From IMG/VR virus record IMGVR_UViG_3300020172_001601, positions 276,342 to 340,341 of that record: DNA of 64,000 nt, one strand, 5' to 3'. Made by a program: the position numbers and the translations under genes. The notes beneath the pieces were generated by a model that was not told where the DNA came from, made no database searches, and saw only the letters and a list, made by a program, of their open reading frames with translations. Below, piece by piece: positions 1 through 14,414 of the stretch; position 1 is the first letter of the stretch, and the number at the start of each line of letters is the position of its first letter.

Positions 1-67
1 GCCCGGCTGCGAAGGCAGATGTAGGTCCAGTGTACCCTAGTGGGTGTCACCTAACGGGAGAAGTCGA

Positions 68-238
68 ATGTGGTATGTGATCCAAGATGACGATGGACCA
101 TTCCTGACGAATGAAACGCCTGCGGAAACAGATGTGATTCTGTTCCAAGGCACTATTGTCGAGGCCGAACGAGCCTTGCAGCGTGCTTGTGAAGATTGGG
201 AATCCGAACACGACGACATGAACGAGGACTTTCAATGA
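68..238 (+). CDS. small acidic hypothetical protein
   Basis: ATG after GGGAG, just downstream of the repeat at 22. Confidence 0.6.
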   Translation: MWYVIQDDDGPFLTNETPAETDVILFQGTIVEAERALQRACEDWESEHDDMNEDFQ

Positions 239-642
239 TTTTTGTAAGCGTCACAAAGAATGACGGCCAAGCCGTTGTTTCGATCAACGCTGCTCAGGAA
301 AGGAAGTATTTTCCTTTGACGAAGCGGGGTTGTATTGCTGCGGGTAAGTGGCTGGCTGAGATCGGAGCGGATAGTTGGAGCAATAGTTCCAGCGTTGACT
401 TCCCGAAAGAAGTCAAGCCTCGCTTCCGGCACAATGTTTCAGACCTGATGACTGAGGGCTTTCGGTCGGTGCCGCCTGTGGTCCAAGAGACTGTGGTTGG
501 CGACTACGAAATTCGTGGCAATCAATACGTTGCGATTGCCATCAACGTCAAGAACCCGAAGGACTCTCATTACTTCGACCCCGATGTGAACAACAACGCC
601 TTTATTCGAGCCTGTGGTTGGGCTTATGAACCGGAGGACTAA
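235..642 (+). CDS. hypothetical protein
   Basis: ATGA overlap with the previous stop; 135 aa. Confidence 0.7.
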   Translation: MIFVSVTKNDGQAVVSINAAQERKYFPLTKRGCIAAGKWLAEIGADSWSNSSSVDFPKEVKPRFRHNVSDLMTEGFRSVPPVVQETVVGDYEIRGNQYVAIAINVKNPKDSHYFDPDVNNNAFIRACGWAYEPED

Positions 643-894
643 ATGTCTTTTCCAAAAGACGGGACAGTGTTAAATGGGGCATTCTGGCTAAATGGGGAAT
701 CATGGCTAATCATGGAACCCCAAAAGCCACTGAATGAATATCTTGCACAATCATTGCAGGAGCAGCGGCAATACATTGAACGCCTGACCAAAAGGGCAGA
801 CGCACTGGAACAATGGCTGGCTAGGTCCAGTGTACCCTCAAGGGCAAGGAGAACAAAACATGGCAAGTCCTTGGAACGTGGTGGAACTGGTTGA
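643..894 (+). CDS. hypothetical protein (reads through the repeat at 822)
   Basis: ATG abuts the previous TAA; contains repeat-encoded RSSVP. Confidence 0.5.
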   Translation: MSFPKDGTVLNGAFWLNGESWLIMEPQKPLNEYLAQSLQEQRQYIERLTKRADALEQWLARSSVPSRARRTKHGKSLERGGTG

Positions 895-1297
895 GAAGCC
901 GAAAGGCAGTGTTGGCATGAGTCTGGCTGAGGCCGACAAGTTGCTGCGAACTGCGGGATATTTGCAAGGTGATTGGGACTATTTGAAGGACTATCACTTT
1001 GCGAAGTACGTTTACTTCGACATCAACACAGTGGAAGACGTGGAAGCCTTCCTTGTGAAGCTGGACAAGGACAACGAAGACCATACGAAACCTGGGCCAT
1101 TCCGATGGGGCTGCTCGAAGGCGAAGGGCATTCGGTCCTATTTGAAGAATGAAACATGGAAGAAGGACGAAACTTGGCTAAGGGCAGCAATATCCCACAA
1201 TCGTCGCATCATTTGTTCCTGCCATGAGGGTGGGTCATATAAGCGACGGGATGAACTGCCGATTGGTCATCAAGAGAGGCCGTGGGGGATGAAGTAG
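860..1297 (+). CDS. hypothetical protein
   Basis: AGGAG RBS then ATG 860; the stop is the repeat TAG. Confidence 0.8.
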   Translation: MASPWNVVELVEKPKGSVGMSLAEADKLLRTAGYLQGDWDYLKDYHFAKYVYFDINTVEDVEAFLVKLDKDNEDHTKPGPFRWGCSKAKGIRSYLKNETWKKDETWLRAAISHNRRIICSCHEGGSYKRRDELPIGHQERPWGMK

Positions 1298-1349
1298 GTC
1301 CAGTGTACCCTAGCTGGTGTTGAGAGAACGAACTCGAACTGGAGAAATC

Positions 1350-2060
1350 ATGAAAGAACTCGAAGCTGCGTTGAACGAAGAGTTGGCGAAGGTGCTGGGT
1401 GCAAAGCACAACTGGATGGGCGTGATTGCCGGGGTTGCCGGTCGCCGAGCCAGTGAGTTTGCCCGGACGAAGAACGGTTTGCTGGAAGACGTTGTGACCG
1501 ACGTGACTGGCGACATCATTCTTCAGGCGAAGGAAGGCAAGCTGGCGGGTGCGGTGATTCGTGCCAAGGAAGCATCCCATACGGATGAAGAACTGGTGGA
1601 GAACTTACGGCACGTCGTCATGAAGGCGGCGTTCTACCGGGTGAGTGATGCCATGAAGTGGCGCTATCGCAGCGGCACTCAGTTCAGCCAGATCAGTGCT
1701 GAGAATGACTTCTCCGAGACTGTGGAAGCTCGCCCGGAAACCGAAACCGACTTGACCTATTACACGGACCTGTTGGTGAATGAGTTGGAAGTGATGGCGA
1801 CTGCTGCCGACTGGAAGCACAATCGCACCGGGAACCCCAGCTATCCGAAGCAGGCGAAGCGGTTACGGAAGTCCAAGGAAATGGTGCCGGATCGGGTCGA
1901 GGGGATGGCGTTGAAGGATTTGATGGAGAAGTACAGCGTCGGCAGCAAGGGCGGGATGCAACAGCATCTTGACGACATTGGGCAGGCACTTGCCCGTGTT
2001 GCCGGTCGGCTGGGTGATCCTACCTTGGTTCGAGGGACCAAGGGGATCGAGGTTGCTTAG
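1350..2060 (+). CDS. putative sigma-70/ECF-like sigma factor
   Basis: Region-2-like LEDVVTDV...LRHVVMKAAFYRVSDAMKWRYR and region-4 HTH-like RVEGMALKDLMEKYSVGSKGGMQQHL; GGAG RBS; the stop is the repeat TAG. Confidence 0.55.
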   Translation: MKELEAALNEELAKVLGAKHNWMGVIAGVAGRRASEFARTKNGLLEDVVTDVTGDIILQAKEGKLAGAVIRAKEASHTDEELVENLRHVVMKAAFYRVSDAMKWRYRSGTQFSQISAENDFSETVEARPETETDLTYYTDLLVNELEVMATAADWKHNRTGNPSYPKQAKRLRKSKEMVPDRVEGMALKDLMEKYSVGSKGGMQQHLDDIGQALARVAGRLGDPTLVRGTKGIEVA

Positions 2061-2114
2061 GTCCAGTGTACCCTAGTGGGTGTAACAACCCACTAGACTT
2101 TGCGAGGGAATCAA

Positions 2115-2399
2115 ATGCCAAAAGGTCAATTGCCAAAAGATCAAATTGTATATCAGGTCGTCACTAAAGGTGGCGGCGTTGATGGTCGGGACCATACTGA
2201 CAAGGGCGGCAACATCAAGTTCGCATCCTTTGATCGTGCCGAAGCTGAGAAGCAAGTCACGGCATGGGATGACCTGAAGTTGGTTGCCATGAGTGGCAAA
2301 GAATTGCTGGCCCTTAAAAAGAAGGTCTTGGCAAAGTTGGACGGTGTTGAAAAGCTGGTGCTTGAGTTGCCCGCAACGGTGCGGACGAACAATTGGTAG
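2115..2399 (+). CDS. hypothetical protein
   Basis: GAGGG RBS; the stop is the repeat TAG. Confidence 0.75.
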   Translation: MPKGQLPKDQIVYQVVTKGGGVDGRDHTDKGGNIKFASFDRAEAEKQVTAWDDLKLVAMSGKELLALKKKVLAKLDGVEKLVLELPATVRTNNW

Positions 2400-2455
2400 G
2401 TCCAGTGTACCCTAGTGGGTGTAACAGCCCACTGGACTTTGCGAGGAAGTGAACC

Positions 2456-2782
2456 ATGCGATTGAGATATGACTATTCAACAAAGATGTGCCGTGACCGA
2501 TTCGCAAGGATCGAGAAACTCGGCAAGATCAAGTTGGTGCGGGGCTATCGCTACTTTGGCCGGTACAACACGAGCCATGAAGCGGTGCTAGTTGTCGGAG
2601 AGAACGGCACTGCACGCTTCGGCGGGTTGTTGTGGGGTTATGGTGGCGAAGGTCCACGGGGATTGCAGGAACTATTGTTGAAGCTGAATGTGCCAGCGGC
2701 ACAAGCTGAAGCGATTGCTTTCTCAACACCCCGGAAGGATGAGATCGGCGAAGACTGGCGGCTGGTGCTGCCGGTCAACTAG
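2456..2782 (+). CDS. hypothetical protein (WGYGGEGP motif)
   Basis: GAGG RBS; the stop is the repeat TAG. Confidence 0.8.
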   Translation: MRLRYDYSTKMCRDRFARIEKLGKIKLVRGYRYFGRYNTSHEAVLVVGENGTARFGGLLWGYGGEGPRGLQELLLKLNVPAAQAEAIAFSTPRKDEIGEDWRLVLPVN

Positions 2783-2844
2783 GTCCAGTGTACCCTAGTG
2801 GGTGTGCTGGTGAGTGTTTCAAAACCCTGTTTCGGAGAGATCGA

Positions 2845-3111
2845 ATGAGCAAGTCAAGTGCAGTTGTGGTTGTTGGTCGTGGCCGTCCTGAGCAGTACAG
2901 CGCCGGATTCATCCGTGCCTTCAAGGTGATCGTGCGGAAGCACGGTTTGCTGGCGGGTCGGGAGTTCATCAACGCCAACGGCGTGACGGTCGGCGGGAAG
3001 CATCGGGACGTGAGCATCAGCTTGCCGACCCTGAGCAAGTACGTCAAACGTGATGAAGTCGGTGGCAAGGCCGTGCCTCTCTTCCGTGGTCGTCCTACGA
3101 AGGCAGCGTAA
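2845..3111 (+). CDS. small basic protein with two AT-hook-like RGRP motifs
   Basis: GRGRP near the N-terminus and RGRPTK at the C-terminus; GGAG RBS. Confidence 0.7.
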   Translation: MSKSSAVVVVGRGRPEQYSAGFIRAFKVIVRKHGLLAGREFINANGVTVGGKHRDVSISLPTLSKYVKRDEVGGKAVPLFRGRPTKAA

Positions 3112-3266
3112 CCTTCGGGTATGCGGGGCAGGGAATGGTCCCTGCCCTATAGGGTGCTTGGCCTAGCCGAGCAATAGCAATACCCAAATGAGAATCACTG
3201 GGCGGCGTTTAGGTCTAATGTACCCTAGAGGGTGTTGAACACAACATCCTTGAATGCGAGGAAATC

Positions 3267-4091
3267 ATGAGTGGATTTGCAGTCGGAACGTATGTTGGCC
3301 CGGCTGGTGTTCGTCGGCTGTCTTATGAGGACGGGCTGGCGAAGCTGAAGGGAAAAGACCAGAAGAAGTTGGAAAACAACACCTATCTGGTGAAGGTGGA
3401 TGACAAGACGCTGGGCGTGAAACTTCACAATACCATCGTCGTCTACATCTTCAAGAGCGGGGTGTACCAACTGGACACGGGCGGTTGGCGTACCGTGACC
3501 TCAAAGGACCGCATCAACCGATATGGTCCAGCGACGGTGCATCAGAAGAACAACATTTGGTACATCGGTGACGGCATCTATGAGGATGGCGTCCGGGTCA
3601 ATGCTGAAGGCAAGGTGTTGACGCCGCAACGTGGGGTCAAGGTGGTCGAAGCGAAGAAACGCAAGCTGGACCGCATGGTGTTGAAATACATCAAGGGGTT
3701 CGGGGAGCATGTGATTCGCAACGGGTTGCAAGTGGATAAAGCTGACAAGCCCACCGAGCAATCGCCGTGGAAGGTCGTGGAGTTAGTTGAAGGCCCCAAG
3801 CCTATTGCTCCGGGGCCGGGAGACTGTTGGGCGTGTTACTTCGGTATCACGTCAGACGATCCCCTGAAAGAGCCACTAGGGGTCGAGCATCTGCTTGAGC
3901 ATATGCTCGAAGCATACTTCGTCCCCAGCTTACTCTGGAAGGCGATTGTGGCGAATGGGTATCAAAACCCCGGCTTCATCTGGCATAGCATTGCCAGCGA
4001 TGCCCGGCGTGGCGAAAGCCGGTTCCTAAGTCGTGTCCTGACTGCCTACTTCCGAAAGCGGAAACCGGCACTGTTGGACTTGATGGAATAA
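3267..4091 (+). CDS. hypothetical phage protein
   Basis: 274-aa ORF, GAGG RBS, followed by a hairpin. Confidence 0.85.
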   Translation: MSGFAVGTYVGPAGVRRLSYEDGLAKLKGKDQKKLENNTYLVKVDDKTLGVKLHNTIVVYIFKSGVYQLDTGGWRTVTSKDRINRYGPATVHQKNNIWYIGDGIYEDGVRVNAEGKVLTPQRGVKVVEAKKRKLDRMVLKYIKGFGEHVIRNGLQVDKADKPTEQSPWKVVELVEGPKPIAPGPGDCWACYFGITSDDPLKEPLGVEHLLEHMLEAYFVPSLLWKAIVANGYQNPGFIWHSIASDARRGESRFLSRVLTAYFRKRKPALLDLME

Positions 4092-4097
4092 AAAACA

Positions 4098-4140
4098 GGA
4101 ACCCGCCATGAACTGAATCATGTGCGGGTTCTCTTGATTT
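4098..4140 (+). terminator. hairpin / putative terminator
   Basis: GAACCCGC...GCGGGTTC followed by TCTTGATTT. Confidence 0.5.
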
Positions 4141-4165
4141 ACAACTTGTGAAAGGCTGGTGGACA

Positions 4166-4465
4166 ATGAACGCTGTTGGATTGAAGAACTTTACTGAACA
4201 GGTGATAAACTCGCCTGAACCCGTGCTGGTTGACTTCTGGGCAAGTTACTGCGCTCCATGCCGGGCGTTAAAGCCGATCCTGAATGAAGTGTCAGCGACG
4301 GGGGCCAAGGTTGTGACGGTGGACATAACCGAGGAACCTGAACTGACTGCCCACTACGGCATCACTGCAATTCCTACGTTGGTCGTCTTCAAGGGCGGGC
4401 AACCGGGCCAGCGGGTTGTCGGGGTGAAGAAGAAGGACGAACTTCTGCAACTCATCAGTGCCTAA
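4166..4465 (+). CDS. trxA: thioredoxin
   Basis: VLVDFWASYCAPC active site, cis-Pro motif AIPTL, 99 aa. Confidence 0.9.
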   Translation: MNAVGLKNFTEQVINSPEPVLVDFWASYCAPCRALKPILNEVSATGAKVVTVDITEEPELTAHYGITAIPTLVVFKGGQPGQRVVGVKKKDELLQLISA

Positions 4466-4547
4466 ACCGTGTGCCGCCTTCGGGCGGCAACACCTTGCGA
4501 AGTCTAGTGTACCCTACGGGGTGTTCCAAGAAAGAAGAGGAGCTACT

Positions 4548-5153
4548 GTGAATGAGCTTGCGATTGCACGCCCCGGAAGTCTTGATCCCCGAACCCGTGT
4601 TCGTCACGGCAGAGAACGTGAACGGCAGATCGCCGTTGCGTTGAAGGATCAAGTGGGCCTCCCCATTACTGATGCCACTGAGTTCGAGGACAAAGAACGC
4701 AAGGTTGACCGATGGATCGCCTATCCTTCGGGCCGAGTTGCCCTTCAGATCAAATACCGAGAAGTCGGGGAAGACCTTCTGTTCGAGGTCTACGACAAGT
4801 TCTTCGGTTGGGATGATCCGAAGAACAAGCTGGGCCGGGATATGTTCGGCGATGCCAAGGAGTACGCCGTGCTGCTGGCTGACCGTCATACCGTCGTGAT
4901 GGTTCCGACACAGCTTGCCAAGGATACCGTCGCCAAGATGACGGAGAAGGCACGCAAAGAAGGTTTCACGCATGGAGCGGTGAGTTCAACTCTCCGCTAC
5001 TATGTTCACGGCCTGAAGCTGGAATTGAAGGTCCAGCGTGATCCCGGCGACGGACGCCAGAAGATGGTGGCATACATCCCCGCCAGCTACTTCGTGGCCG
5101 AGGCTCAAGCCAAGGTTTACCAAGTGGCACTGCCGAAGAAGTGGCAATCGTAG
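4548..5153 (+). CDS. putative PD-(D/E)XK-family nuclease
   Basis: G.E.E helix, KVD...LQIK motif; GTG start after GAGGAG; the stop is the repeat TAG. Confidence 0.55.
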   Translation: MNELAIARPGSLDPRTRVRHGRERERQIAVALKDQVGLPITDATEFEDKERKVDRWIAYPSGRVALQIKYREVGEDLLFEVYDKFFGWDDPKNKLGRDMFGDAKEYAVLLADRHTVVMVPTQLAKDTVAKMTEKARKEGFTHGAVSSTLRYYVHGLKLELKVQRDPGDGRQKMVAYIPASYFVAEAQAKVYQVALPKKWQS

Positions 5154-5206
5154 CTCCAGTGTACCCTATGGGGTGTGAAGACAATATTGCACCCCATAGG
5201 GAGATG

Positions 5207-5431
5207 ATGATGAGCATTGAACGACAACTTGTGAAGGGAGTAACGACGACTGATGTTGCCGAAGTCGTCAAGGTCAATGAGTGCATTCGCTACATTGAAT
5301 CTTGCGGCTGGTTGTTGAAGCAACGTGCCAGGGGCTATTACTACTTTCGCAACGAAAACGCCAATGAAGGTCAGCGAGACATGACTTTTTCCTTGGCAGA
5401 ACTTCGGGAGGCATACCACAATGGATGGTAA
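5207..5431 (+). CDS. hypothetical protein
   Basis: GGGAG RBS after the repeat at 5151. Confidence 0.65.
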   Translation: MMSIERQLVKGVTTTDVAEVVKVNECIRYIESCGWLLKQRARGYYYFRNENANEGQRDMTFSLAELREAYHNGW

Positions 5432-5627
5432 AGTCAAAATAAGTCACAACTATTGGTGGGAAAACGCAGTGTATTACAGGCGTTCCATCTGCGGCGGCAA
5501 TATTCAGGTCTGGAACGGTCGAATATGGACTGATGCTGCCGAGTCCTGACTTATACTGACTATTGCATACCCTTCTCCATAGGGAGTATGGGGAAGAAAG
5601 TCAGGTCTATTGTACCCTAGCCGGTGT

Positions 5628-5930
5628 AATCGCAAATTACAACACCCAGCACGGGTGGAACGCCGAGAGCCACAGGAGTAAGCACAGAAAGCATCCTCGC
5701 TGCGAAAACAATCGAGGATCGACCCGGAATAAGCCGGTCAGACAGAGTGTGAAGGCAAGAGGGTAAGCCCCTCCCACAATATATCACTCTGAATCAGTGT
5801 GGCCACACTGAGTCTGATCGAACGAAGAAGGGCAGTGCCGAAACGACTGGACGGGCGAAAGTCAGTCACTTGCTGTTGCACAGTGCATCGAAGACCGAAG
5901 GGGACGCCCTTCGGTTTTTCTTTTTTCATT
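5628..5930 (+). ncRNA. candidate structured non-coding RNA filling one repeat unit
   Basis: No RBS-led ORF; nested stems (ATCCTCG/CGAGGAT, CAGAGTG/CACTCTG, TCAGAC/GTCTGA, 18-bp palindrome 5794-5811); ends in a terminator. Confidence 0.5.
5895..5927 (+). terminator. intrinsic terminator
   Basis: ACCGAAGGG-ACG-CCCTTCGGT plus T tract. Confidence 0.85.
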
Positions 5931-5984
5931 TTGTTTAGGTCTATTGTACCCTAGCTGGCACAACCCCTAACGAAAGGCAATGCG

Positions 5985-6173
5985 ATGAACGAACAAGAAT
6001 GGCTGGAAGCATTCAATGCCGAGTTCCTGCGTAAAACCGGCATCACATGGGCAGACGGTGGGCTGGAAGATCAGGACGCCATCAATCGCTACTTCCCGGA
6101 AGACGTGAAAGACGCTGTTCTCCAGCACATGGAGAAATACGACTTGGACGACGTGACCCAACTGTGGGCATAG
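5985..6173 (+). CDS. small acidic hypothetical protein
   Basis: The stop is the repeat TAG. Confidence 0.75.
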   Translation: MNEQEWLEAFNAEFLRKTGITWADGGLEDQDAINRYFPEDVKDAVLQHMEKYDLDDVTQLWA

Positions 6174-6192
6174 GTCCAGTGTACCCTATTGG

Positions 6193-6324
6193 GTGTAATC
6201 GACCCGGCAACGCCCGAAAGATTCTAGGCAAGTACGGCGTAACCGTGACATTCCGATCATCCTGTTCACCGGCCTGCGGGTCAAAGGGGATAGAGAGTCG
6301 GGTCGATTACATTCTTTTTCTTTT
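6193..6324 (+). ncRNA. candidate structured RNA or leader closed by a 16-bp stem
   Basis: 6193-6208 pairs with 6297-6312 (2 G-U), followed by a T tract. Confidence 0.45.
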
Positions 6325-6337
6325 AGGAGAACCTGCG

Positions 6338-6502
6338 GTGAAGAAAAAATACCTTATTGCTCTGCCTTCTTTCCCTAATTCCAAGGGATTCAATCATCGA
6401 ACCATTCTTGTCAGTGCAACCGACAAGAACGATGCCGTTAGCCTTGCCCGGCATTTGCGTCCGGGTGAAAACATTGGCGACATCAAGGAAGTGAACTACT
6501 AG
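6338..6502 (+). CDS. small hypothetical protein
   Basis: AGGAG RBS, GTG start; the stop is the repeat TAG. Confidence 0.65.
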   Translation: MKKKYLIALPSFPNSKGFNHRTILVSATDKNDAVSLARHLRPGENIGDIKEVNY

Positions 6503-6558
6503 GTCCAGTGTACCCTAGTGGGTGTAACGATCACTCAACCCCTGCGAAAGAAACGACA

Positions 6559-6990
6559 ATGGACAACCTCACGAAACTTGCGATTTCCAAGGCTCTGGAA
6601 AAGGACACGAAGAACTTCAAGGCCACGCCGGGAGTTCACGACATCGACACCACGATCACCCTGCGAGTCAAAGGCACGGTGAAGAAGGGTGCGGATTCGG
6701 ATTACACGCCGACCGTGGACATTCCGCTCCTGCCGACCTTGGCACTCGTCATGGAGAAGGCTGGCTTCATGCGGGAACGGGCAAAGGAATTGCTGATCGA
6801 AGCAATGACGGAAGCCCTCGAACTCAGCACCAAGGGCGAAGAGTTCGTTGCCGACCGTGTGAAGAACATCGACGAAGCGATGGCGCACGTCCGGGAAGTC
6901 ACCGGGGCCTTGCCGAAGAAGACCAAGAGCGGGGCAACGAACGTCACCGTGACGGTCGAAGAAGTCGCTCCGGTCGAAGTCGGTGCCTAA
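6559..6990 (+). CDS. hypothetical protein
   Basis: 143 aa, strong codon bias, followed by a terminator. Confidence 0.85.
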   Translation: MDNLTKLAISKALEKDTKNFKATPGVHDIDTTITLRVKGTVKKGADSDYTPTVDIPLLPTLALVMEKAGFMRERAKELLIEAMTEALELSTKGEEFVADRVKNIDEAMAHVREVTGALPKKTKSGATNVTVTVEEVAPVEVGA

Positions 6991-6998
6991 CACTGACC

Positions 6999-7034
6999 GC
7001 ACGGCAACACTGACAATGTTGCCGTGCTTTTTGT
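6999..7034 (+). terminator. intrinsic terminator
   Basis: GCACGGCAACA...TGTTGCCGTGC plus T tract. Confidence 0.8.
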
Positions 7035-7096
7035 TGGTCGTTGTTAGGTCTAGTGTACCCTATTGGGTGTAACGAACCCCAACCTGCGAGAATAAA

Positions 7097-7429
7097 ATGA
7101 AAACTGCGACCATCCCGCAACGCAATCAACGCCTGTACAAGTGCTGGAACGGCGAACTGGAAACAGTGCTGTTCCGTGAGCAATCAATCTCCGAAGGGGC
7201 GTTTGCCGAAACGTGGCTAGTGTTCGACCCGAAGGACAGCCGCCGCATTCGTTGCAGCATTGGCAGCTACTTCACCACGCCTTACTTGGCATGGAAGGCC
7301 GAACTCAAGAGCTACCAAGACGGCCTGAAGGCCCAACGGGTGGCACTGAAGAAGGCACGGGAAGAGATCGTCACCACGAAGGCCACCATTGCCCGGCTCA
7401 AGGACATGGTTGCCCGCTCAAGCACATAA
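7097..7429 (+). CDS. hypothetical protein with C-terminal coiled coil
   Basis: ORF directly after the repeat at 7045. Confidence 0.75.
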   Translation: MKTATIPQRNQRLYKCWNGELETVLFREQSISEGAFAETWLVFDPKDSRRIRCSIGSYFTTPYLAWKAELKSYQDGLKAQRVALKKAREEIVTTKATIARLKDMVARSST

Positions 7430-7439
7430 GGAAAGAACA

Positions 7440-7673
7440 ATGGCACGGCCTCAAGCATACGACCCGCAAGAGGGTTACAAGTATCAAATCCTGACCCGCA
7501 ATCCAGCGTATGGCAGAGCATGGGAGCATTGCGACTATGCGAAGGACAAGGACGAGAAAAACCACTTGATCGGCGAATATCGCTTGGCCTATGGTGCCGG
7601 GTGGGAATTCAAGGTCATCACGTTGCCCGTCAAGTATTGGCCGAAGAGGTCCAGTGTACCCTTGATGGTGTAA
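7440..7673 (+). CDS. hypothetical protein
   Basis: AAGGA RBS; C-terminal RSSVPLMV is encoded by the repeat at 7646. Confidence 0.7.
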   Translation: MARPQAYDPQEGYKYQILTRNPAYGRAWEHCDYAKDKDEKNHLIGEYRLAYGAGWEFKVITLPVKYWPKRSSVPLMV

Positions 7674-7697
7674 CCAACACCCTGCGAGGACAAGACA

Positions 7698-7928
7698 ATG
7701 ATTAGCCGTGTGCAAGTATTTGAAACCAAGGGCAAGCAGTTCCCGACCTTGAAGAAGGCAATTGACTTCCGGGAGGGGCTGATTGAAGAGTTCATTCGGA
7801 AGCTGCCAGGGTTCGATCAAATGCGACACAAGGACCGCATTGCCTTCATTCAATCCATCATCGACAACCGTGAGGTTCTGGTGGACTTGTTTGACTACAA
7901 CGAAATTCTGGACGAAGACGAAGAATAA
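7698..7928 (+). CDS. hypothetical protein
   Basis: GAGGA RBS. Confidence 0.75.
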   Translation: MISRVQVFETKGKQFPTLKKAIDFREGLIEEFIRKLPGFDQMRHKDRIAFIQSIIDNREVLVDLFDYNEILDEDEE

Positions 7929-7937
7929 AGAGGATCA

Positions 7938-8100
7938 TTCAGGTCTGTGAGCAGCGGGGTAACTGGCAGGGAGGCATCCTGTCAGCCTGAATCGAGCGAT
8001 GGTAAGGGCCAGCGAGGGGGCTGGACATTCGACTGTATTAGGTTCCAGCCCTGATGCGACCGAATGCCCCTCGCTGGCACCTGCCTGCATTCAAACCAAG
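7938..8100 (+). ncRNA. candidate pseudoknotted RNA
   Basis: 12-bp stem 8008-8019/8067-8078 enclosing crossed pairings GCTGGA/TCCAGC and CATTCG/CGAATG. Confidence 0.4.
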
Positions 8101-8165
8101 GGTACAAATGACCTTACGTCTATTGTACCCTAGTGGGTGTAACAAACAACAAGAAAAGGAACACA

Positions 8166-8327
8166 ATGAACCCTGCCCTGCAAGCTGCTTTGATTACACT
8201 CGTTCAAGTCATTGTGAAGCTGGAGCCGCATCAATTGGCTGCGGCCCTTGACGAAATCGACCTGAGCGATGAAGGGTTCGAGGAAGAACTCAATATTGTG
8301 AAGCAAGCCATCAAGTGGCAGGATTAG
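8166..8327 (+). CDS. small hypothetical protein
   Basis: AAGGA RBS; the stop is the repeat TAG. Confidence 0.7.
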   Translation: MNPALQAALITLVQVIVKLEPHQLAAALDEIDLSDEGFEEELNIVKQAIKWQD

Positions 8328-8380
8328 GTCCAGTGTACCCTAGTGGGTGTAACGAATAACAATCATCAAGGAAACCGATC

Positions 8381-8584
8381 ATGGCTCGCAAGACCAAAGA
8401 AGAAAAACGAATCGAAGCCGCTGTCGATGCCGCCTTCAGCAAGGTGGGCAACCGTCGCCAGTTCAACATCTTCGACCTGAGCAAGATTCAAGCCGCTGGT
8501 GTGGCTGCTGGCAAGGCCGGGGAGGACATTGAAGCCGCCGTGAGCAAAGCCTGCGATCAATACGAGATCAAAGAAGCAGCGTAG
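8381..8584 (+). CDS. small hypothetical protein
   Basis: AAGGA RBS; the stop is the repeat TAG. Confidence 0.8.
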   Translation: MARKTKEEKRIEAAVDAAFSKVGNRRQFNIFDLSKIQAAGVAAGKAGEDIEAAVSKACDQYEIKEAA

Positions 8585-8634
8585 GGCCAGTGTACCCTAG
8601 TGGGTGTAACGAACAAAACTAATGCGAGACACTC

Positions 8635-9072
8635 ATGAACACCTGCAAAACCTGCAAATCTTGGAATGATGGCATTTGTGAATTGGCTGATACGGTCACA
8701 GGGCCTAAATTGTTTGACATTGTTGTTAGGGTTGCCGACGATCACGGACTTGAAACATCATTGAGAACAGGTCCAGACTTCGGCTGCGTTCATCATTCAA
8801 GCCCTGCCGTGCGACTTGGCACGTTGAACGTAGAGACTGATTGGGATTTCAGTCTTGAATTGAATGGCACTGTTTACAGCGACAGCGAGTTTTCGATTGA
8901 TATTGATTCGATGGATCAATTGGAATCAATCCAAGTTATGGGGCCATTCGGTTCACCGTCTGGCGGCAAACAATGGGAAATCCTTGCAGCTTTGGAAGCA
9001 ATCAAGGCAAATCCTAGTGAGTTCTTTTCTAATCAGGGCGGCAACCGTGGGGCAATGTGGCATCCGAAATAG
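8635..9072 (+). CDS. hypothetical protein with Cys-rich N-terminus
   Basis: CKTC...C...FGCVH; the stop is the repeat TAG. Confidence 0.75.
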   Translation: MNTCKTCKSWNDGICELADTVTGPKLFDIVVRVADDHGLETSLRTGPDFGCVHHSSPAVRLGTLNVETDWDFSLELNGTVYSDSEFSIDIDSMDQLESIQVMGPFGSPSGGKQWEILAALEAIKANPSEFFSNQGGNRGAMWHPK

Positions 9073-9107
9073 CTCCAGTGTACCCTGGTGGGTAAGGAGA
9101 TCAAACC

Positions 9108-9401
9108 ATGCTGACAACTGCGGAACGAATTGAACAAGCGACAGCTTACGGCGTAGGCACCAAAGCCTATGTTGACACCTTCGGGGGAATGGTCCCCTGT
9201 GTGGTCACGGAAATTCACAAGCCGAACGCCAATGGCATTGTCATCGGCCACGACGAATTGACCGTGCGAATTGAAGAAACCCGTGGGGGATATACGAAAG
9301 GCGAGATCGTCACACGGTCAGCCGCATACACTCCCCCACGAAAGCATCGTATCCTGCGGGGATACAGCTACCGAATCAACACGGCGTACAAGTACGTCTA
9401 G
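9108..9401 (+). CDS. hypothetical protein
   Basis: AAGGAG RBS; stop lies inside the repeat at 9393. Confidence 0.8.
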   Translation: MLTTAERIEQATAYGVGTKAYVDTFGGMVPCVVTEIHKPNANGIVIGHDELTVRIEETRGGYTKGEIVTRSAAYTPPRKHRILRGYSYRINTAYKYV

Positions 9402-9418
9402 TGTACCCTACATGGCAA

Positions 9419-9749
9419 CACGGTATGGCTGCTCAAGTGGTGTTGCAGCATTGCTTGAGCATAACACGAGGAGAGAAAAACCAATGGGCAACTAATTCCC
9501 CGATGATGACAAATAGGCGATGCAACAAGCCTTGATCGGACGCAATCGTGCTGCAATACGATTGAACAAGACAAGAAACGACTGCAAGACCTTGCTGTTT
9601 AGGGGCGACCATACGGAATGTCGCAAAACTTAGCCGTGCCGAATTGGTCAGTGCGCAAAGCAGAGAAAACCAGCACCAGCTACCACTGGTGAAAGGCATC
9701 GGTAGAGCAGGTTGGAGTCCTGCAAATCTGGTTTTCTCTGCTTTGGGCA
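9419..9749 (+). ncRNA. candidate structured non-coding RNA filling one repeat unit
   Basis: No credible ORF; hairpin 9430-9461; perfect 18-bp stem 9656-9673/9728-9745 enclosing two hairpins. Confidence 0.5.
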
Positions 9750-9805
9750 TAGGTCTAGTGTACCCTAGTGTGTGTAACGAACACTCAACCCTGCGAGACA
9801 AGAAC

Positions 9806-10171
9806 ATGGCCGACTTGAAAGAAAAGATTGCTGAGTTTGTGAAGGCCGCTGACGAAGTGTCTGCCGCTTATTGGGAGCGACAGAAATTCACCTTCGCCAA
9901 GCCGACGCAACACCGTGCCGACTTCATCAGCGACAAATGGGTGCGTGTCGTGTCTCTGGACGTGCCGCATGAAGGCCCGCCAGTCGTGTCGTCGGTCTAT
10001 GCCTTCATCGCCCTGCAAGACGGCCACACGAAGACGCTGGGAGCAATCAAGGCGGGCGACATTCACAAGCCTGCCGGGTTCAAGGCCCCTGCCAAGCACG
10101 CACGGGGCAACGTCTTCGAGGATGACTTCCGCAAGGCTATCCAGCCGAACGGCATCGTTTACTTGAAATAA
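9806..10171 (+). CDS. hypothetical phage protein (GDIHKPAGFKAPAKHARGN motif)
   Basis: ORF after the repeat at 9750; the motif resembles one I recall from other phage hypothetical proteins. Confidence 0.85.
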   Translation: MADLKEKIAEFVKAADEVSAAYWERQKFTFAKPTQHRADFISDKWVRVVSLDVPHEGPPVVSSVYAFIALQDGHTKTLGAIKAGDIHKPAGFKAPAKHARGNVFEDDFRKAIQPNGIVYLK

Positions 10172-10303
10172 TACAACGCAGACTAGGCCAGTCTGCGGGG
10201 GAGCCAACGAGCGGCTATGCCAAGCAGGAAACTCCCCTGAAATCACAGGTCCAGTGTACCCTGGTGGGTGTGAATAACACCCACCACTTCTAAGGAATGC
10301 GAG

Positions 10304-10531
10304 TTGACTTACCAAGAATTGAAAGCAAAGGTCAGTGCAGCACTTGGCGACGTTGGATTTTCCATCGAAGCGACGGACGACGGCCAGTTGGTCATTTATA
10401 CCGACTTGAAAGAAGTCGAAGATCAGGACGAACTGGAGAACTACGAGCCGACGAATGAACCCTTGGAATCATTGGACGACTTTCTGAGAGAAGAGTTGGG
10501 CGACAAAGACGCTTCCCTGTTTCTCAAGTAG
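10304..10531 (+). CDS. acidic hypothetical protein
   Basis: AAGGA RBS, TTG start; the stop is the repeat TAG. Confidence 0.7.
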   Translation: MTYQELKAKVSAALGDVGFSIEATDDGQLVIYTDLKEVEDQDELENYEPTNEPLESLDDFLREELGDKDASLFLK

Positions 10532-10585
10532 GTCCAGTGTACCCTAGTGGGTGTAACGAACAACCTCAACACGGAGAACTCTGCG

Positions 10586-10816
10586 ATGGCTATTACGCTG
10601 ACCCCTTCCTATGGTCGTGACTACAAGAACGGCAAAGAAGTCCAAGAAGCCTGGGACGCTGGCAAGGACTTCACGATCAACTCCATCGGCCACCCGGACG
10701 ATGGGCGGCAGATCAACAAGCAGGACGCCGAACGTGAGGGCGGCACCTTCAACATCCGGTACAAAAAACTGACCCAGATCAAGGTCATCAAGGTCAAGAA
10801 GGTCGCTGCGGCTTAG
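10586..10816 (+). CDS. hypothetical protein (LTPSYGRDYK motif)
   Basis: GGAG RBS; the stop is the repeat TAG. Confidence 0.85.
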   Translation: MAITLTPSYGRDYKNGKEVQEAWDAGKDFTINSIGHPDDGRQINKQDAEREGGTFNIRYKKLTQIKVIKVKKVAAA

Positions 10817-10842
10817 GTCCAGTGTACCTTACACAGTGTAAC

Positions 10843-11053
10843 GCCTCCCAAACATCGGCCTTGGGCAAGCCAATCAATCAGAATAAAGGAACCCCTTCCC
10901 ATGAATGTCTGAAGTCCGCTAACTCCCCGGCGTAGTCATCCACGTTAGAGCGGGGCGGGACTGCAAAGCGATGGCCGCACGTCAGCAATGGGCAGCATTG
11001 TGCTGGCTGACGTGTGAATGAAGTGCCTCCCAAACATTGGCCTTGGGCAAGCC
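10843..11053 (+). repeat. pair of 29-bp direct repeats in a non-coding unit
   Basis: GCCTCCCAAACAT(C/T)GGCCTTGGGCAAGCC at 10843-10871 and 11025-11053. Confidence 0.9.
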
Positions 11054-11067
11054 GAAAGCAAATGCGT

Positions 11068-11100
11068 AGGGCAGGACCAACCTGCCCTTTTTTTGTTTTT
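11068..11100 (+). terminator. intrinsic terminator
   Basis: AGGGCAGG-ACCAA-CCTGCCCT plus T tract. Confidence 0.85.
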
Positions 11101-11149
11101 GTTTGTGTAGGTCTATTGTACCCTAGAGGGTGTAACAAGCGAACAACAT

Positions 11150-11287
11150 GGCGGCGTAGCTCAACTGGCTAGAGCAACCATCATTATCGTAGCGATTGAT
11201 CGGGGGTCCACGGTCAATGCGGCCAACGTGTGTACAGCGTTGGTTTGAGAGGATGGGAAGACGGGGGTTCGATGCCCTCCGCTGTCT
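11150..11287 (+). ncRNA. tRNA-like RNA with the anticodon loop replaced by a ~70-nt insert
   Basis: Acceptor GGCGGCG/CGCTGTC, TA, D arm GCTC-AACTGGCTA-GAGC, stem CCATC/GATGG, 5-nt variable loop, T arm GGGGG-TTCGATG-CCCTC; no encoded CCA. Confidence 0.8.
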
Positions 11288-11402
11288 GCTTACACTGTAG
11301 GGCATTTGCCCGAACAACGAGGCGTCAGAACACGCCTACAACCCCGAAAGGGGAGAGAGTGTAAGGTAGCCGTAGTGTACCCTAGTGGGCAGGAGAACAA
11401 CA

Positions 11403-11561
11403 ATGCGAAAAACTGAAGGGGCAACCAAAGCCCACGCCTCTGTCGGGTATCACAAACACCTTCGACCATTCGGCAAGCGACTGGCGAACAAAGCCACTCG
11501 CAAGAATGGCAAGCGTAGCACCAGTGTACCCTATGGGGCAGGAGACAAACATGGAAATTGA
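11403..11561 (+). CDS. small basic protein
   Basis: AGGAG RBS; MRKTEGATKAHASVGYHKHLRPFGKRLANK...; reads through the repeat at 11516; below the ORF-track cut-off. Confidence 0.55.
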   Translation: MRKTEGATKAHASVGYHKHLRPFGKRLANKATRKNGKRSTSVPYGAGDKHGN

Positions 11562-11922
11562 AGACGTGCGAAATACCCGATCCATGAGAATGGACCCGGA
11601 AAGCCCTGCGGAATACGACGAGATGGACGCCATCACCGCTGGCCCCAATGGTATGAAATTGATGCCAGTGTTCAGCGGTGAGATGTTTCAACAGTCCGTT
11701 GCCTATCCCGTCATCGTGGAAGCATGGGACAAGAAGAACAGCGGACGCCACAAACGCCGATGGGAAGCGACATTCACCCAAGCCGAACGGAACAAGATCA
11801 GCCGGTATTATGGCCGGTTTTACCGCTGGTATCTGGTCAGCGGCACGCCCAAACGTGTGTCACTGCAATTGAACACCTTGACCCTCCTGCAAAGGGCAGT
11901 GAACTTCTTCGCTGAATGTTAG
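11551..11922 (+). CDS. hypothetical protein
   Basis: AGGAG RBS; the stop is the repeat TAG. Confidence 0.8.
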   Translation: MEIEDVRNTRSMRMDPESPAEYDEMDAITAGPNGMKLMPVFSGEMFQQSVAYPVIVEAWDKKNSGRHKRRWEATFTQAERNKISRYYGRFYRWYLVSGTPKRVSLQLNTLTLLQRAVNFFAEC

Positions 11923-11943
11923 GGCTAGTGTACCCTAGAGGGC

Positions 11944-12237
11944 ATGATGAAAGACGCATACGGAAACGATCAAGTATATCTGGTCCAGCCCACAACTCTG
12001 GACTATGAGATCAGCTATGGTGGCGATGGTGTCAAAACATGCCAAGAGGGACGCTATCGACACTATTTCACTGCCAGTGCTGGCGGTTTGTCGGGTAGCA
12101 TTAGAATTCAATTGAACCGAGTCAGCGCCGAACGGTTTGCTGCCTATAACGGCCTGCGGTTGATAACCGACGTTGAACGTGAAGAAATTCAAGAAAGGTG
12201 GAGCGTCAGAGTGCCGGATTGGTCCAGTGTACCCTAG
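11944..12237 (+). CDS. hypothetical protein
   Basis: Starts 6 nt after the 18-bp repeat core; ends WSSVP* inside the next repeat. Confidence 0.65.
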   Translation: MMKDAYGNDQVYLVQPTTLDYEISYGGDGVKTCQEGRYRHYFTASAGGLSGSIRIQLNRVSAERFAAYNGLRLITDVEREEIQERWSVRVPDWSSVP

Positions 12238-12274
12238 ACGGTGTAACGATCACTCAACCCTGCGGAGAATGACA

Positions 12275-12526
12275 ATGGTTCAATTGAAAGTCGTGGCTGT
12301 GTCGAGCAACCACAATAGTTTCGGCCTGCGAAACATGATCCTCATCGGGGACAATGGCGAAGGCTGGCAAGCTGCGGCCAATGACCTGAACGTGAAGCCG
12401 AAGGATACCATCCTGCGGATACCCGAAGGGCAGGACATTCCCACGTTCCTGACGCTGCAATCTTTCGAGATTCCTTCACAACTGGCCGACCCGCCTGCCG
12501 AACTATTGAAAGAAGTTTGGGGCTAG
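12275..12526 (+). CDS. hypothetical protein
   Basis: GGAG RBS; the stop is the repeat TAG. Confidence 0.8.
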   Translation: MVQLKVVAVSSNHNSFGLRNMILIGDNGEGWQAAANDLNVKPKDTILRIPEGQDIPTFLTLQSFEIPSQLADPPAELLKEVWG

Positions 12527-12584
12527 GTCCAGTGTACCCTAGAGGGTGTAAGGAACACTTCAGTCCTCTGCGAAAGGCAATGCG

Positions 12585-12920
12585 ATGTTGAGCCACAAAA
12601 TTGCGATTTACATTCCTTCCACTGTCAACGGCAATCAGCCCGCCCCGGTTGATATGATCGAACGGTGGGTGCGGGCCAGCAAGATCAAGCTGGCCAACCT
12701 GTTCGGTGGGTTTACGACCTACAACGGGCAAGGGGGATGGTACTCGCCCGAACACGGTTTGATCGAAGAGAACGTGATTATCGTTCAAGCGTTCACCGAT
12801 CAAGAGGGGCTGACCAAACTGGACAAAGTGAACGAACTGGCGAAGGAAATCGCCAGCGACATGGGCCAGGAAATGGTGTCGGTCGAAGTCGATGGAACAC
12901 TCAACTTCGTGACAGCGTAA
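12585..12920 (+). CDS. DUF3574-like / PII-fold-like hypothetical protein
   Basis: FGGFTTYNGQGGW...E...GQEMV pattern. Confidence 0.55.
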   Translation: MLSHKIAIYIPSTVNGNQPAPVDMIERWVRASKIKLANLFGGFTTYNGQGGWYSPEHGLIEENVIIVQAFTDQEGLTKLDKVNELAKEIASDMGQEMVSVEVDGTLNFVTA

Positions 12921-12925
12921 GGCAG

Positions 12926-12955
12926 GGACGGGCAGTAATGCCCGTCTTTTTTTCT
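12926..12955 (+). terminator. intrinsic terminator
   Basis: GACGGGCA-GTAA-TGCCCGTC plus T tract. Confidence 0.85.
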
Positions 12956-12988
12956 GAGTTTGTGTAGGTCTATTGTACCCTAGAGAAC

Positions 12989-13255
12989 ATGAGAGTCAGC
13001 AACACATTATTGATTTCCCTGTTTTATGAACCGGGAACGTCACATATTGCCGGAATTGAAAACCGAGCAATACAAGCGATGGAATTGGGGATGATTTCAG
13101 AACTCCCCAAGATCACTGTGGCGAAAAGTGAGAAGACACCATTCTGGCACTTGAAGCTGGAAGTCAAGGATGAAGATCGGCCATTCTGGTTCGGTTTTTA
13201 CTTAGGGAAAGACTTCTGCATCAACAATCGACCAATCACTGTCGGCTGTGATTAG
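12989..13255 (+). CDS. hypothetical protein
   Basis: Starts 6 nt after the repeat core; the stop is the repeat TAG. Confidence 0.7.
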   Translation: MRVSNTLLISLFYEPGTSHIAGIENRAIQAMELGMISELPKITVAKSEKTPFWHLKLEVKDEDRPFWFGFYLGKDFCINNRPITVGCD

Positions 13256-13309
13256 GTCCAGTGTACCCTAGAGGGTGTAAGGAACACTTAACCCCCTGCG
13301 AGATACGCC

Positions 13310-13671: not shown

Positions 13672-13725
13672 GTCCAGTGTACCCTATATGGTGTGAAGGA
13701 CACCAACAAAAAGGGAAACCAAGCC

Positions 13726-14321: not shown

Positions 14322-14325
14322 CAAC

Positions 14326-14356: not shown

Positions 14357-14414
14357 ATGTTTTTGTGTAGGTCTATTGTACCCTAGTGGGTGTCACACAA
14401 AGGAGACAATTGCG

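What the first reader, a model, noticed from the sequence alone, without database searches (positions are those of the whole stretch)
1350..2060. ECF-sigma-like gene carried as a cassette inside the array
Seen: 236-aa protein with region-2-like and region-4 HTH-like segments, flanked by two element copies. Established: large phages encode alternative sigma factors that redirect host RNAP. Inference: it is the best in-window candidate for the factor reading the element (TAGGTC-N16-GTGT could be a -35/-10 pair), which would give positive autoregulation. Against this, the would-be spacer is the most conserved part, unlike normal ECF promoters.
Basis: inference. Interest (0 to 1): 0.65.

Follow-up and report, generated by a model that had tools for sequence, protein, structure and literature searches.

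The report
Divergent sigma-like gene in promoter array
A 236-residue gene in a huge freshwater phage looks like a very divergent bacterial sigma factor that standard domain models miss, but a close relative keeps the same repeated promoter-like element without this gene, so it is probably not the factor that reads the element.

Summary
Window 1350-2060 (+) is a real, conserved 236-aa gene, and a copy of the repeated element sits on each side of it.

The "sigma-like" reading is supported by structure and profile evidence, not by standard models. Pfam, PHROGs and PDB sequence searches find nothing. These results point to sigma:
- A pLDDT 92.9 model of residues 1-110 has sigma domain 2 as 9 of its 11 best PDB matches (Z 5.8-6.4).
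- The C-terminal half matches sigma region 4.
- A profile comparison with a true sigma family from the same phage scores far above 32 controls.
- Language-model neighbours are sigma-70 clusters.
- Docking onto the E. coli beta' clamp helices gives weak support.

The claim that this protein reads the element is not supported:
- A syntenic relative (381 kb, 79% complete) has a 68-copy array with the same invariant TGTACCCTA core and no detectable member of this family.
- The array has no host-type promoter that could make the first protein.
- In at least 11 copies the ribosome-binding site sits too close to the core for GTGT to be a -10 element.
- The genome has four canonical sigma genes elsewhere, and no phage RNA polymerase was found.

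Most likely it is an accessory, fast-evolving sigma-family protein that binds RNA polymerase and is itself expressed from the array.

The parts
1350..2060 (+). The 236-aa sigma-like gene, stop codon included
   Evidence: ORF list and sequence. The family is conserved: 28 close homologues and 63 clusters at 50% identity.
1350..1664 (+). N-terminal helical domain (residues 1-105), sigma-2-like
   Evidence: AF2 model of residues 1-110 has pLDDT 92.9 and pTM 0.84. In the VIA-wide search, 9 of the top 11 and at least 19 of the top 50 of 48,161 PDB representatives are sigma domain 2, at Z 5.0-6.4. Docking to E. coli beta' residues 225-345 gave weak support.
1665..1745 (+). Disordered, poorly conserved linker (residues 106-132)
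   Evidence: pLDDT is below 50 for residues 106-132. This is the gap-rich region of the alignment.
1746..2036 (+). C-terminal helical domain (residues 133-229) with a sigma-4-like helix-turn-helix
   Evidence: Structural matches: SigR region 4 (Z 5.8, rmsd 2.3 A, 64 of 65 residues), CnrH, SigW and SigD region 4. hhalign aligns it with region 4.2 of a true sigma family. Phage integrase N-terminal domains score about the same.
1295..1320 (+). Upstream element copy. Its first three bases are the TAG stop of the preceding gene. It is the presumed promoter of the sigma-like gene.
1340..1343 (+). Shine-Dalgarno GGAG of the sigma-like gene
2058..2083 (+). Downstream element copy. Its TAG is the stop codon of the sigma-like gene. 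A 9-bp-stem hairpin follows, partly overlapping it (CTAGTGGGT/ACCCACTAG, about 2073-2096).
22..16681 (+). The part of the element array that lies in the window. The whole array spans genome 265,226-293,005 and has 61 copies, about one per small gene.

Best explanation
The gene encodes a very divergent member of the sigma-70 superfamily with the minimal two-domain layout: a sigma-2-like domain, a flexible linker and a sigma-4-like helix-turn-helix domain.

Inferred expression: it is transcribed, like its neighbours, from the array element directly upstream of it.

Inferred action: the protein binds the host RNA polymerase core, through the beta' clamp helices and probably the beta flap. It acts as an accessory, lineage-specific specificity or hijacking factor. 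Most likely it directs core polymerase to a promoter set that has not yet been identified.

It is not the obligatory reader of the array element. That element's invariant TGTACCCTA core must be read by something shared with relatives that lack this gene: a canonical phage sigma made from host-type promoters, or a host factor.

Shown: gene reality, predicted fold similarity, profile similarity, and absence of the gene from one array-bearing relative. Inferred: RNAP binding, timing and target.
For: Sigma-likeness:
- N-domain model has pLDDT 92.9.
- BldN, WhiG, AlgU, SigK, SigB, SigL, HrdB, EcfG and pro-SigK sigma-2 domains fill 9 of the top 11 places among 48,161 PDB representatives.
- The whole-protein model matches SigB, SigL and BldN across both domains in the correct order, and SigR region 4 at rmsd 2.3 A.
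- hhalign of the family profile against the phage's own true sigma family scores 32.8 (P 2.8e-4) over 135 collinear columns. The best of 32 reversed or block-shuffled controls scores 20.5.
- ESM Atlas feature neighbours are sigma-70 clusters at 0.95.
- Docking of residues 1-110 to E. coli beta' 225-345 scored 0.45, against 0.01 for the best control: 'weak support'.

- G004/G036 is a syntenic relative. Its first array gene (an AAA ATPase) is 63.5% identical and its structural block 40-77% identical.
- It has 68 TTGTACCCTA copies.
- It has no family member by HMM at E<=1 in 381 kb; positive controls for that search worked.
- hmmsearch --max on the array ORFs found none, and hhalign of 63 ORFs found none.
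- The array has no sigma-70-type promoter.
- The rest of the genome has at least 28 uniform TTTACA-N14-GTGGTAnAAT promoters. One lies 8 nt before a canonical sigma gene.
- The protein evolves fast (27-31% identity where the neighbouring AAA ATPase is 67-75%), while the core 8-mer does not change.
Against: - No Pfam, PHROGs or PDB-sequence match, alone or as a profile.
- All structural Z scores are 5-6.4, a range the tool warns can reflect only a common helical arrangement. Foldseek E-values are not significant.
- hhalign probability is only 41%.
- The docking pass is in the weak range.
- No target promoter class for the protein was found. The three classes I could define (sigma-70-like, the array element, CTAAATA late-like) all occur in the relative that lacks the gene.
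- Every contig found through the gene (9 of 9, down to 24% identity to this protein) carries the TGTACCCT array. Some functional link to the array therefore remains possible.
- There is only one independent gene-less lineage, and it is 79% complete.
Confidence: 0.45

Rival explanations
1. The protein is the sigma that reads the array element, which gives positive autoregulation of the whole array. In G036 a non-orthologous sigma would have taken over this role.
For: - It is the only transcription-factor-like gene that recurs inside the arrays.
- All 9 contigs reached through the gene or its homologues, down to 24% identity to this protein, carry TGTACCCT arrays.
- The upstream half of the element differs between phages, as does the protein.
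- G036 has an extra 312-aa sigma right at the end of its array, behind a TTGTCA-N16-TATAAT promoter. That sigma has no close counterpart in this genome.
Against: - G004/G036 keeps the array and its core without the gene.
- There is no host-type promoter in the array to make the first molecules.
- The invariant TGTACCCT would lie in the spacer of the proposed -35/-10 pair.
- In 9 copies the SD starts 7 nt after the core, and in 2 copies 1 nt after it, so a start site downstream of GTGT would miss it.
- Co-occurrence was ascertained through the gene, so it is biased.
- The protein diverges quickly while the core does not change.
Confidence: 0.2
2. A sigma mimic or decoy. The protein keeps the core-binding surfaces of a sigma but does not recognise promoters. 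It competes with host sigmas for core RNAP and so shuts off host transcription early in infection.
For: - Sigma-2-like fold and a weak docking pass on the beta' clamp helices.
- Very fast sequence divergence, as expected in an arms race with the host.
- Accessory distribution.
- No target promoter class was found.
Against: - Both sigma domains, including the helix-turn-helix, are retained over the whole family.
- W22 and R97 are nearly invariant in the N-domain, which is consistent with a nucleic-acid or core contact.
- Known phage shut-off proteins are usually much smaller (own knowledge).
Confidence: 0.15
3. Not a sigma relative at all. It is an unrelated two-domain helical protein, for example a DNA-binding or structural early protein, and its resemblance to sigma is the generic look of helical bundles.
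For: - No sequence-model hit.
- Z is at most 6.4 and Foldseek E is at least 0.19.
- The C-terminal domain matches phage integrase N-terminal domains equally well.
Against: - At least 19 of the top 50 structural neighbours of the N-domain are sigma-2 domains, although sigma factors are only a small fraction of the 48,161 representatives (the fraction is my own estimate).
- Domain order and linker match sigma.
- The hhalign score is far above the controls.
- The language-model neighbours are independent evidence.
Confidence: 0.2

Closest known systems
ECF (group 4) sigma factors, e.g. M. tuberculosis SigL (6dv9_F), Streptomyces BldN (6dxo_A), P. aeruginosa AlgU (8z6g_B)
   Same: Two-domain layout of sigma-2, linker and sigma-4, with no sigma-3 or sigma-1.1 and a similar size. 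These are the best structural neighbours. The protein has a region-2.1-like EDVVTDVTGDIILQA motif and a region-4.2-like GMALKDLMEKYSV.SKG.MQQHL motif.
   Different: No Pfam Sigma70_r2, r4, r4_2 or ECF match. There are about 40 extra N-terminal residues (two helices) before the region-2-like part. No AAC/CGT-type ECF promoter was seen, and no anti-sigma partner was identified.
Divergent phage-encoded sigmas that switch temporal classes: T4 gp55, SPO1 gp28 and gp34, phiEco32 gp36
   Same: Small, highly diverged sigma-family proteins encoded by phages that lack their own RNA polymerase. They are expressed in one temporal class and act on host core RNAP (own knowledge; the review PMC7824862 describes phage-encoded sigmas in jumbo phages that lack an RNAP). 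A chain of the T4 gp45-dependent late transcription complex (7d7d_F) is among the structural hits, at Z 5.6.
   Different: No sequence similarity was detected. No promoter class could be assigned to this protein. Here the gene is accessory: it is missing from a close relative.
T4 promoter-early stem-loop (PeSL) cassettes. This comparison concerns the array, not the protein.
   Same: Many small co-oriented genes, each preceded by a near-identical promoter-plus-leader module (own knowledge of Arbiol et al. 2010; anatomy).
   Different: The element here is not sigma-70-like. Its 8-bp core is invariant across phages and its upstream half is phage-specific.

Membership tests
Sigma-70 superfamily | Sigma domain 2 fold (helical bundle that binds the beta' clamp helices and the -10 element) | tested here: met
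   N-domain model has pLDDT 92.9. Of 48,161 PDB representatives, 9 of the top 11 and at least 19 of the top 50 are sigma-2 domains, at Z 5.0-6.4, rmsd 2.3-4.1 A and 69-78 residues aligned. The Z values are modest; the enrichment carries the argument.
Sigma-70 superfamily | Sigma domain 4 (helix-turn-helix that binds the -35 element and the beta flap), C-terminal to domain 2 | tested here: inconclusive
   SigR region 4 matches at Z 5.8, rmsd 2.3 A, 64 of 65 residues; CnrH, SigW and SigD region 4 also match. hhalign aligns the region with 4.2. Integrase N-terminal domains score as high. Only 2 of 56 family members touch Pfam Sigma70_r4_2, at E 0.06.
Sigma-70 superfamily | Match to curated sequence models (Pfam Sigma70_r2, r4, r4_2, ECF) | tested here: not met
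   No hit for the protein at E<=10. No r2 hit for any of 25 or 56 family members. The six-frame r2 and r4_2 scans of the genome find four other loci, not this one.
Sigma-70 superfamily | Profile-level homology to bona fide sigma factors | tested here: met
   hhalign of A2 against A3 scores 32.8, P 2.8e-4, probability 41%, over 135 collinear columns. The best of 32 reversed or block-shuffled controls scores 20.5 over at most 47 columns.
Sigma-70 superfamily | Binds RNA polymerase core (beta' clamp helices) | tested here: inconclusive
   Complex prediction with E. coli beta' 225-345 scored 0.45; the best of 3 controls scored 0.01; verdict 'weak support'. The mark was reached by 51 of 78 solved complexes and 2 of 108 mismatched pairs. 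At 0.60 or under, however, it was reached by only 5 of the 78 solved complexes and by all 4 mismatches that passed (of 180). The runs agree in at least 63% of contacts and the partner's pLDDT is at least 76. The real host is unknown.
Sigma-70 superfamily | Confers promoter-specific initiation | not testable with these tools
   No RNA runs hold this sequence. In vitro transcription is needed.
ECF (group 4) sigma factors | Only sigma-2 and sigma-4, joined by a short linker | tested here: met
   Two helical domains (1-105 and 133-229) with a disordered linker at 106-132.
ECF (group 4) sigma factors | Cognate promoter with an AAC-type -35 and a CGT-type -10, often autoregulated, with a co-encoded anti-sigma | tested here: not met
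   The element upstream has neither motif. Its most conserved part would fall in the spacer. No anti-sigma domain was recognised nearby. A relative keeps the element without the gene.

The most novel reading that the evidence does not exclude
The element is read in two parts. A shared factor reads the invariant TGTACCCTA core. A lineage-specific sigma-like subunit (this family in our phage; a non-orthologous 312-aa sigma at the end of the array in G036) reads the phage-specific bases directly upstream of the core. Each phage would then privatise about 60 promoters with its own exchangeable specificity protein, and the array would be self-amplifying once primed.
Probability: 0.12. Interest if true: 0.7.

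Novelty: new member of a known kind. Interest (0 to 1): 0.45.

Why it matters
Huge phages that have no RNA polymerase of their own must reprogram the host enzyme, and phage sigmas are the known way to do it. This family has 63 clusters at 50% identity. It comes from freshwater and sediment metagenomes and is invisible to Pfam and PHROGs, so it is annotated everywhere as hypothetical. Recognising it as sigma-like adds a fifth RNA-polymerase-directed factor to this phage. It also gives a concrete protein to test against the 61-copy promoter-like array beside it. The negative result matters too: the array's reader must be sought among the canonical phage sigmas or in the host.

Tried and rejected
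The element's extent, about -18 to +8 with a G-rich start, resembles T7-type promoters. However, PF00940 was not found in the 340 kb or in two relatives (the control genomes cannot validate that search). None of the 11 ORFs of 600 aa or more looks like a polymerase: seven have Pfam hits to unrelated enzymes, two structural-block ORFs gave no PHROG hit and one (756 aa) was not scanned. The missing roughly 50 kb of the 390-kb assembly could not be searched.
- Multisubunit phage RNAP. There are no Rpb2_6 or Rpb1_2 matches.
- The 3112-aa ORF as a virion RNAP. It has no Pfam, PHROG or PDB hit. Its Atlas neighbours are tape-measure proteins, which is a lead only.
- RNA evidence for start sites. No RNA run holds the sequence.
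- Motif-first search of IMG/VR with TGTACCCT-N-TGTACCCT. Nearly all hits were 9-nt collagen-like coding repeats, not arrays. The 0 of 33 result is therefore meaningless and is not used.
- Sigma-54, sigma-32 and extended -10 readings of the element by eye. None fits.
- An apparent missing neighbour gene in contig L023. It is a point nonsense variant, not a cassette loss.

Full report
CONTEXT. The window is bases 276,342-340,341 of a 340,341-bp IMG/VR virus record that CheckV rates 69% complete. A 390-kb assembly of the same phage exists. Close DNA matches are in freshwater and sediment metagenomes, and none is an RNA run. The window also holds a large terminase, a tyrosyl-tRNA synthetase, a CCA-adding enzyme and baseplate genes. 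This is a tailed jumbo phage. No alternative genetic code was needed.

OBSERVATION. The ORF runs from ATG 1350 to TAG 2058-2060 on the + strand and encodes 236 aa, with GGAG 7 nt upstream.
- It is flanked by TAGGTCCAGTGTACCCTAGCTGGTGT (1295-1320) and TAGGTCCAGTGTACCCTAGTGGGTGT (2058-2083).
- The TAG of each copy is the stop codon of the gene before it.
- The 17-mer core occurs 40 times in the window, all on the + strand, against 0.05 expected.
- All 61 plus-strand TGTACC[CT]T sites of the 340-kb record lie in one block at 265,226-293,005, about one per small gene; two diverged minus-strand copies at the array's right end are described under 'the element' below.
- The gene is real and conserved: 28 homologues at 43-97% identity and 63 clusters at 50% identity in 1.8 billion representatives, all matching over the full length.

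IS IT SIGMA-LIKE? Sequence models say nothing. There is no Pfam or PHROG hit at E<=10. There is no PDB sequence hit, even with profiles. Among 56 family members, the only related Pfam hits are two marginal Sigma70_r4_2 hits and a few HTH hits. Four other lines of evidence agree with each other.

(i) Structure.
- The AF2 model of the whole protein (pLDDT 76.7) has two helical domains, 1-105 and 133-229, and a disordered linker.
- Its best Foldseek hit is M. tuberculosis ECF sigma L, but at E 0.19.
- An exhaustive aligner puts SigB, SigL and BldN over both domains in the right order. It also finds SigR region 4 at rmsd 2.3 A over 64 of 65 residues.
- Residues 1-110, folded alone with a 55-sequence alignment, give pLDDT 92.9.
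- Of 48,161 PDB representatives, 9 of the 11 best matches to that domain, and at least 19 of the best 50, are sigma domain 2. They include BldN (Z 6.4), WhiG (6.2), AlgU (6.1), SigK, SigB and SigL (6.0), then HrdB, EcfG, pro-SigK, SigH, SigI6, sigma-70, RpoS and Taq sigma-A bound to -10 DNA.
- The Z values are below the level the tool calls safe for helical proteins, and Foldseek finds nothing significant for the domain. The enrichment for one family, not any single score, carries the argument.

(ii) Profile comparison. The family alignment A2 was compared with A3, an alignment of homologues of the phage's own bona fide 180-aa sigma. hhalign scored 32.8 (P 2.8e-4, probability 41%) over 135 collinear columns running from region 2 to region 4.2. 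Thirty-two reversed or block-shuffled controls scored at most 20.5 over at most 47 columns.

(iii) Language-model neighbours. The nearest named ESM Atlas clusters are sigma-70-family clusters at 0.95, a score that shuffled proteins reach about once in 100.

(iv) Docking. Residues 1-110 against E. coli beta' 225-345 scored 0.45, and the best control scored 0.01. The verdict was 'weak support'.
- The mark is reached by 51 of 78 solved complexes and 2 of 108 mismatched pairs.
- At 0.60 or under, however, it is reached by only 5 of the 78 solved complexes and by all 4 mismatches that passed (of 180).
- The runs agree in at least 63% of contacts, and the partner's pLDDT is at least 76.

I put the probability that the protein is a diverged sigma-70-superfamily member at about 0.8.

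THE ELEMENT. The consensus is TAGGTC[C/T]A[G/T]TGTACCCTAG[T/A]GGGTGT. Information is high from TAGGTC through TGTACCCTA and again at GGGTGT.
- Intrinsic terminators on the + strand sit immediately before seven copies of the GGTCTATTGTACCC variant, at 5938, 7047, 11110, 12967, 14370, 15112 and 16215. The element restarts transcription after termination, so it behaves as a promoter and not as a terminator.
- In 9 copies the Shine-Dalgarno sequence starts 7 nt after TGTACCCT, and in 2 copies 1 nt after it. For those genes to be served by their own copy, transcription must start at or before about 6 nt after the core.
- That geometry fits a start at the G after CCCTA, or TACCCT acting as a -10-like element. 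It does not fit GTGT as the -10.
- Eight contigs from other phages, reached through homologues of the gene, all carry arrays with the same invariant TGTACCCT. The 5-8 bases upstream differ: GGTCC, TGTCA, GCGGGA, TGTAA, ATCAATAA, AGTAA. This holds even where the protein is only 24-31% identical to ours.

DOES THIS PROTEIN READ THE ELEMENT? The co-occurrence above was ascertained through the gene, so I searched for arrays first.
- Most IMG/VR hits to two spaced cores were collagen-like 9-nt coding repeats and were discarded.
- One genuine array remained, on contig G004 (146 kb). G004 is the same phage as G036 (381 kb, 79% complete); the copy spacings are identical.
- That phage is a syntenic relative of ours. 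Its first array gene, an AAA ATPase, is 63.5% identical. The downstream structural block, including the giant ORF, is 40-77% identical and collinear.
- Its array has 68 forward copies of TTGTACCCTA over 50 kb, with a similar leader (AGTGTTCGAT...CCCCAACGGAGA-ATG) and an A/T-rich upstream half.
- No member of the sigma-like family is detectable in it. The family HMM finds nothing at E<=1 in 381 kb, and the same search finds the gene at E 1e-66 to 1e-79 in three positive controls.
- hmmsearch --max over all ORFs of the array region finds nothing better than 8.7 bits. hhalign of 63 array ORFs against A2 and A3 stays at noise level.

Further arguments against:
- The array contains no sigma-70-type promoter that could make the first molecules.
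- The protein diverges much faster than its neighbours, while the core never changes.
- The genome has four canonical sigma genes, at 48.0, 62.4, 156.0 and 197.1 kb. One lies 8 nt behind a strong host-type promoter.
- G036 keeps orthologues of two of them: the 315-aa sigma at 54.7% identity, and the 180-aa sigma at 48.9% over its N-terminal part.

No phage RNA polymerase was found. PF00940, Rpb2_6 and Rpb1_2 are all negative. No ORF of 600 aa or more looks like a polymerase: of the ten besides the giant ORF, seven were scanned against Pfam and are other enzymes, two gave no PHROG hit and one was not scanned. The 3112-aa ORF looks like a tape measure protein, as a lead only.

The remaining route to that reading is non-orthologous replacement. 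G036 has an extra 312-aa sigma at the end of its array, behind a TTGTCA-N16-TATAAT promoter.

WHAT IT MOST LIKELY DOES. It is a minimal, fast-evolving sigma-family protein expressed from the array. It binds host core RNAP and acts as an accessory specificity or takeover factor. Known phage precedents place a sigma gene in one temporal class and its targets in the next (T4 gp55, SPO1 gp28; own knowledge). Jumbo phages without their own RNAP are described as relying on phage sigmas (PMC7824862).

I could not find its target. The three promoter classes I could define all occur in the gene-less relative as well:
- TTTACA-N14-GTGGTAnAAT, at least 28 copies, all outside the array;
- the array element;
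- CTAAATA 4-8 nt before start codons, about 13 copies, resembling T4 late promoters.

A decoy role, binding core without reading promoters, therefore remains a serious rival.

NOVELTY. Phage-encoded diverged sigmas are a known kind. This is a new, Pfam-invisible family within it, and its function is untested.

Noticed in passing
window 5890-5954, 6999-7063, 11068-11126, 12924-12983, 14326-14386, 15064-15128, 16166-16231: Seven strong intrinsic terminators on the + strand are each followed within about 20 nt by the GGTCTATTGTACCC variant of the element. The array is therefore cut into several operons by terminator-plus-restart modules. The commoner GGTCCAGTGTACCC variant has no terminator before it.
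   Followed up: partly
window 6502-6560, 7047-7095, 9752-9805, 12221-12275, 13255-13310, 14041-14095: In a subset of copies the whole 5' leader is conserved, not only the element: ...GGGTGTAACGAACACTCAACCCTGCGAGA...ATG. A CTGCGAG motif sits where the ribosome-binding site should be. The promoter and leader seem to have spread as one module.
   Followed up: no
window 22-16681 (whole array): The TAG at the start of the element is the in-frame stop codon of the upstream gene in at least 28 of 61 copies. A second TAG and a TAA in the element close another reading frame.
   Followed up: partly
window 16639-16815: At the right end of the array there are two overlapping + strand copies, then GTGCATA repeats and a hairpin (CTTCTTTATTCAAAGAAG). 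Two diverged copies of the element follow on the minus strand (about 16727-16747 and 16790-16812), pointing back into the array.
   Followed up: no
genome 265,224-265,310 (about 11 kb upstream of the window): The first element copy of the array lies in a roughly 550-nt non-coding divergent region. About 30 nt after it comes a terminator-like hairpin with a T run (GGGAGCAG...CTGCTCCCTTTTTT). This may produce a short leader RNA or act as an attenuator.
   Followed up: no
genome 21-254 kb, and window about 35,400-35,433 (minus strand): There are at least 28 very uniform sigma-70-type promoters, TTTACA-N14-GTGGTA[T/G/C/A]AAT, all outside the array. One lies 8 nt before the canonical sigma gene at 62.4 kb.
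   Followed up: partly
window 35,450-35,476 and 36,000-36,072; 11 further sites elsewhere in the genome: CTAAATA occurs 4-8 nt before the start codons of about 13 genes, including the gene before the giant ORF. It is conserved at the orthologous site in relative G004. It resembles T4 late promoters (TATAAATA) that give near-leaderless mRNAs.
   Followed up: partly
window 36073-45411: A 3112-aa ORF lies upstream of the baseplate genes. It has no Pfam, PHROG or PDB match, and its Atlas neighbours are tape-measure proteins (a lead only). Relative G004 has a 3167-aa counterpart that is 43.5% identical over 1075 aligned residues.
   Followed up: partly
window 63,135-64,000: About 26 tandem copies of a 33-bp (11-codon) repeat lie inside the ORF that runs off the end of the contig. 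The assembly probably broke here.
   Followed up: no
window 19959-20858, 24900-26000 (-), 29957-31573 (-), 50419-51975: Large terminase, tyrosyl-tRNA synthetase, tRNA nucleotidyltransferase and baseplate wedge genes. Elsewhere in the genome there are a Leu/Ile-type tRNA synthetase, DNA polymerase III alpha, an NAD-dependent ligase and many tRNA-like repeats.
   Followed up: partly
L023:1400-1420, corresponding to window about 2130: In a 3.2-kb contig from another sample that is 99.97% identical, the 94-aa gene just downstream of the sigma-like gene carries a nonsense change (AAA to TAA).
   Followed up: yes
window 1-6000: Eight small DNA runs (about 260-306 million letters each) labelled with a single coded organism ('organism A'), from two samples, hold 27-29% of the sampled words of this stretch. 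This may be a culture that carries a related phage, and so a lead to the host.
   Followed up: no
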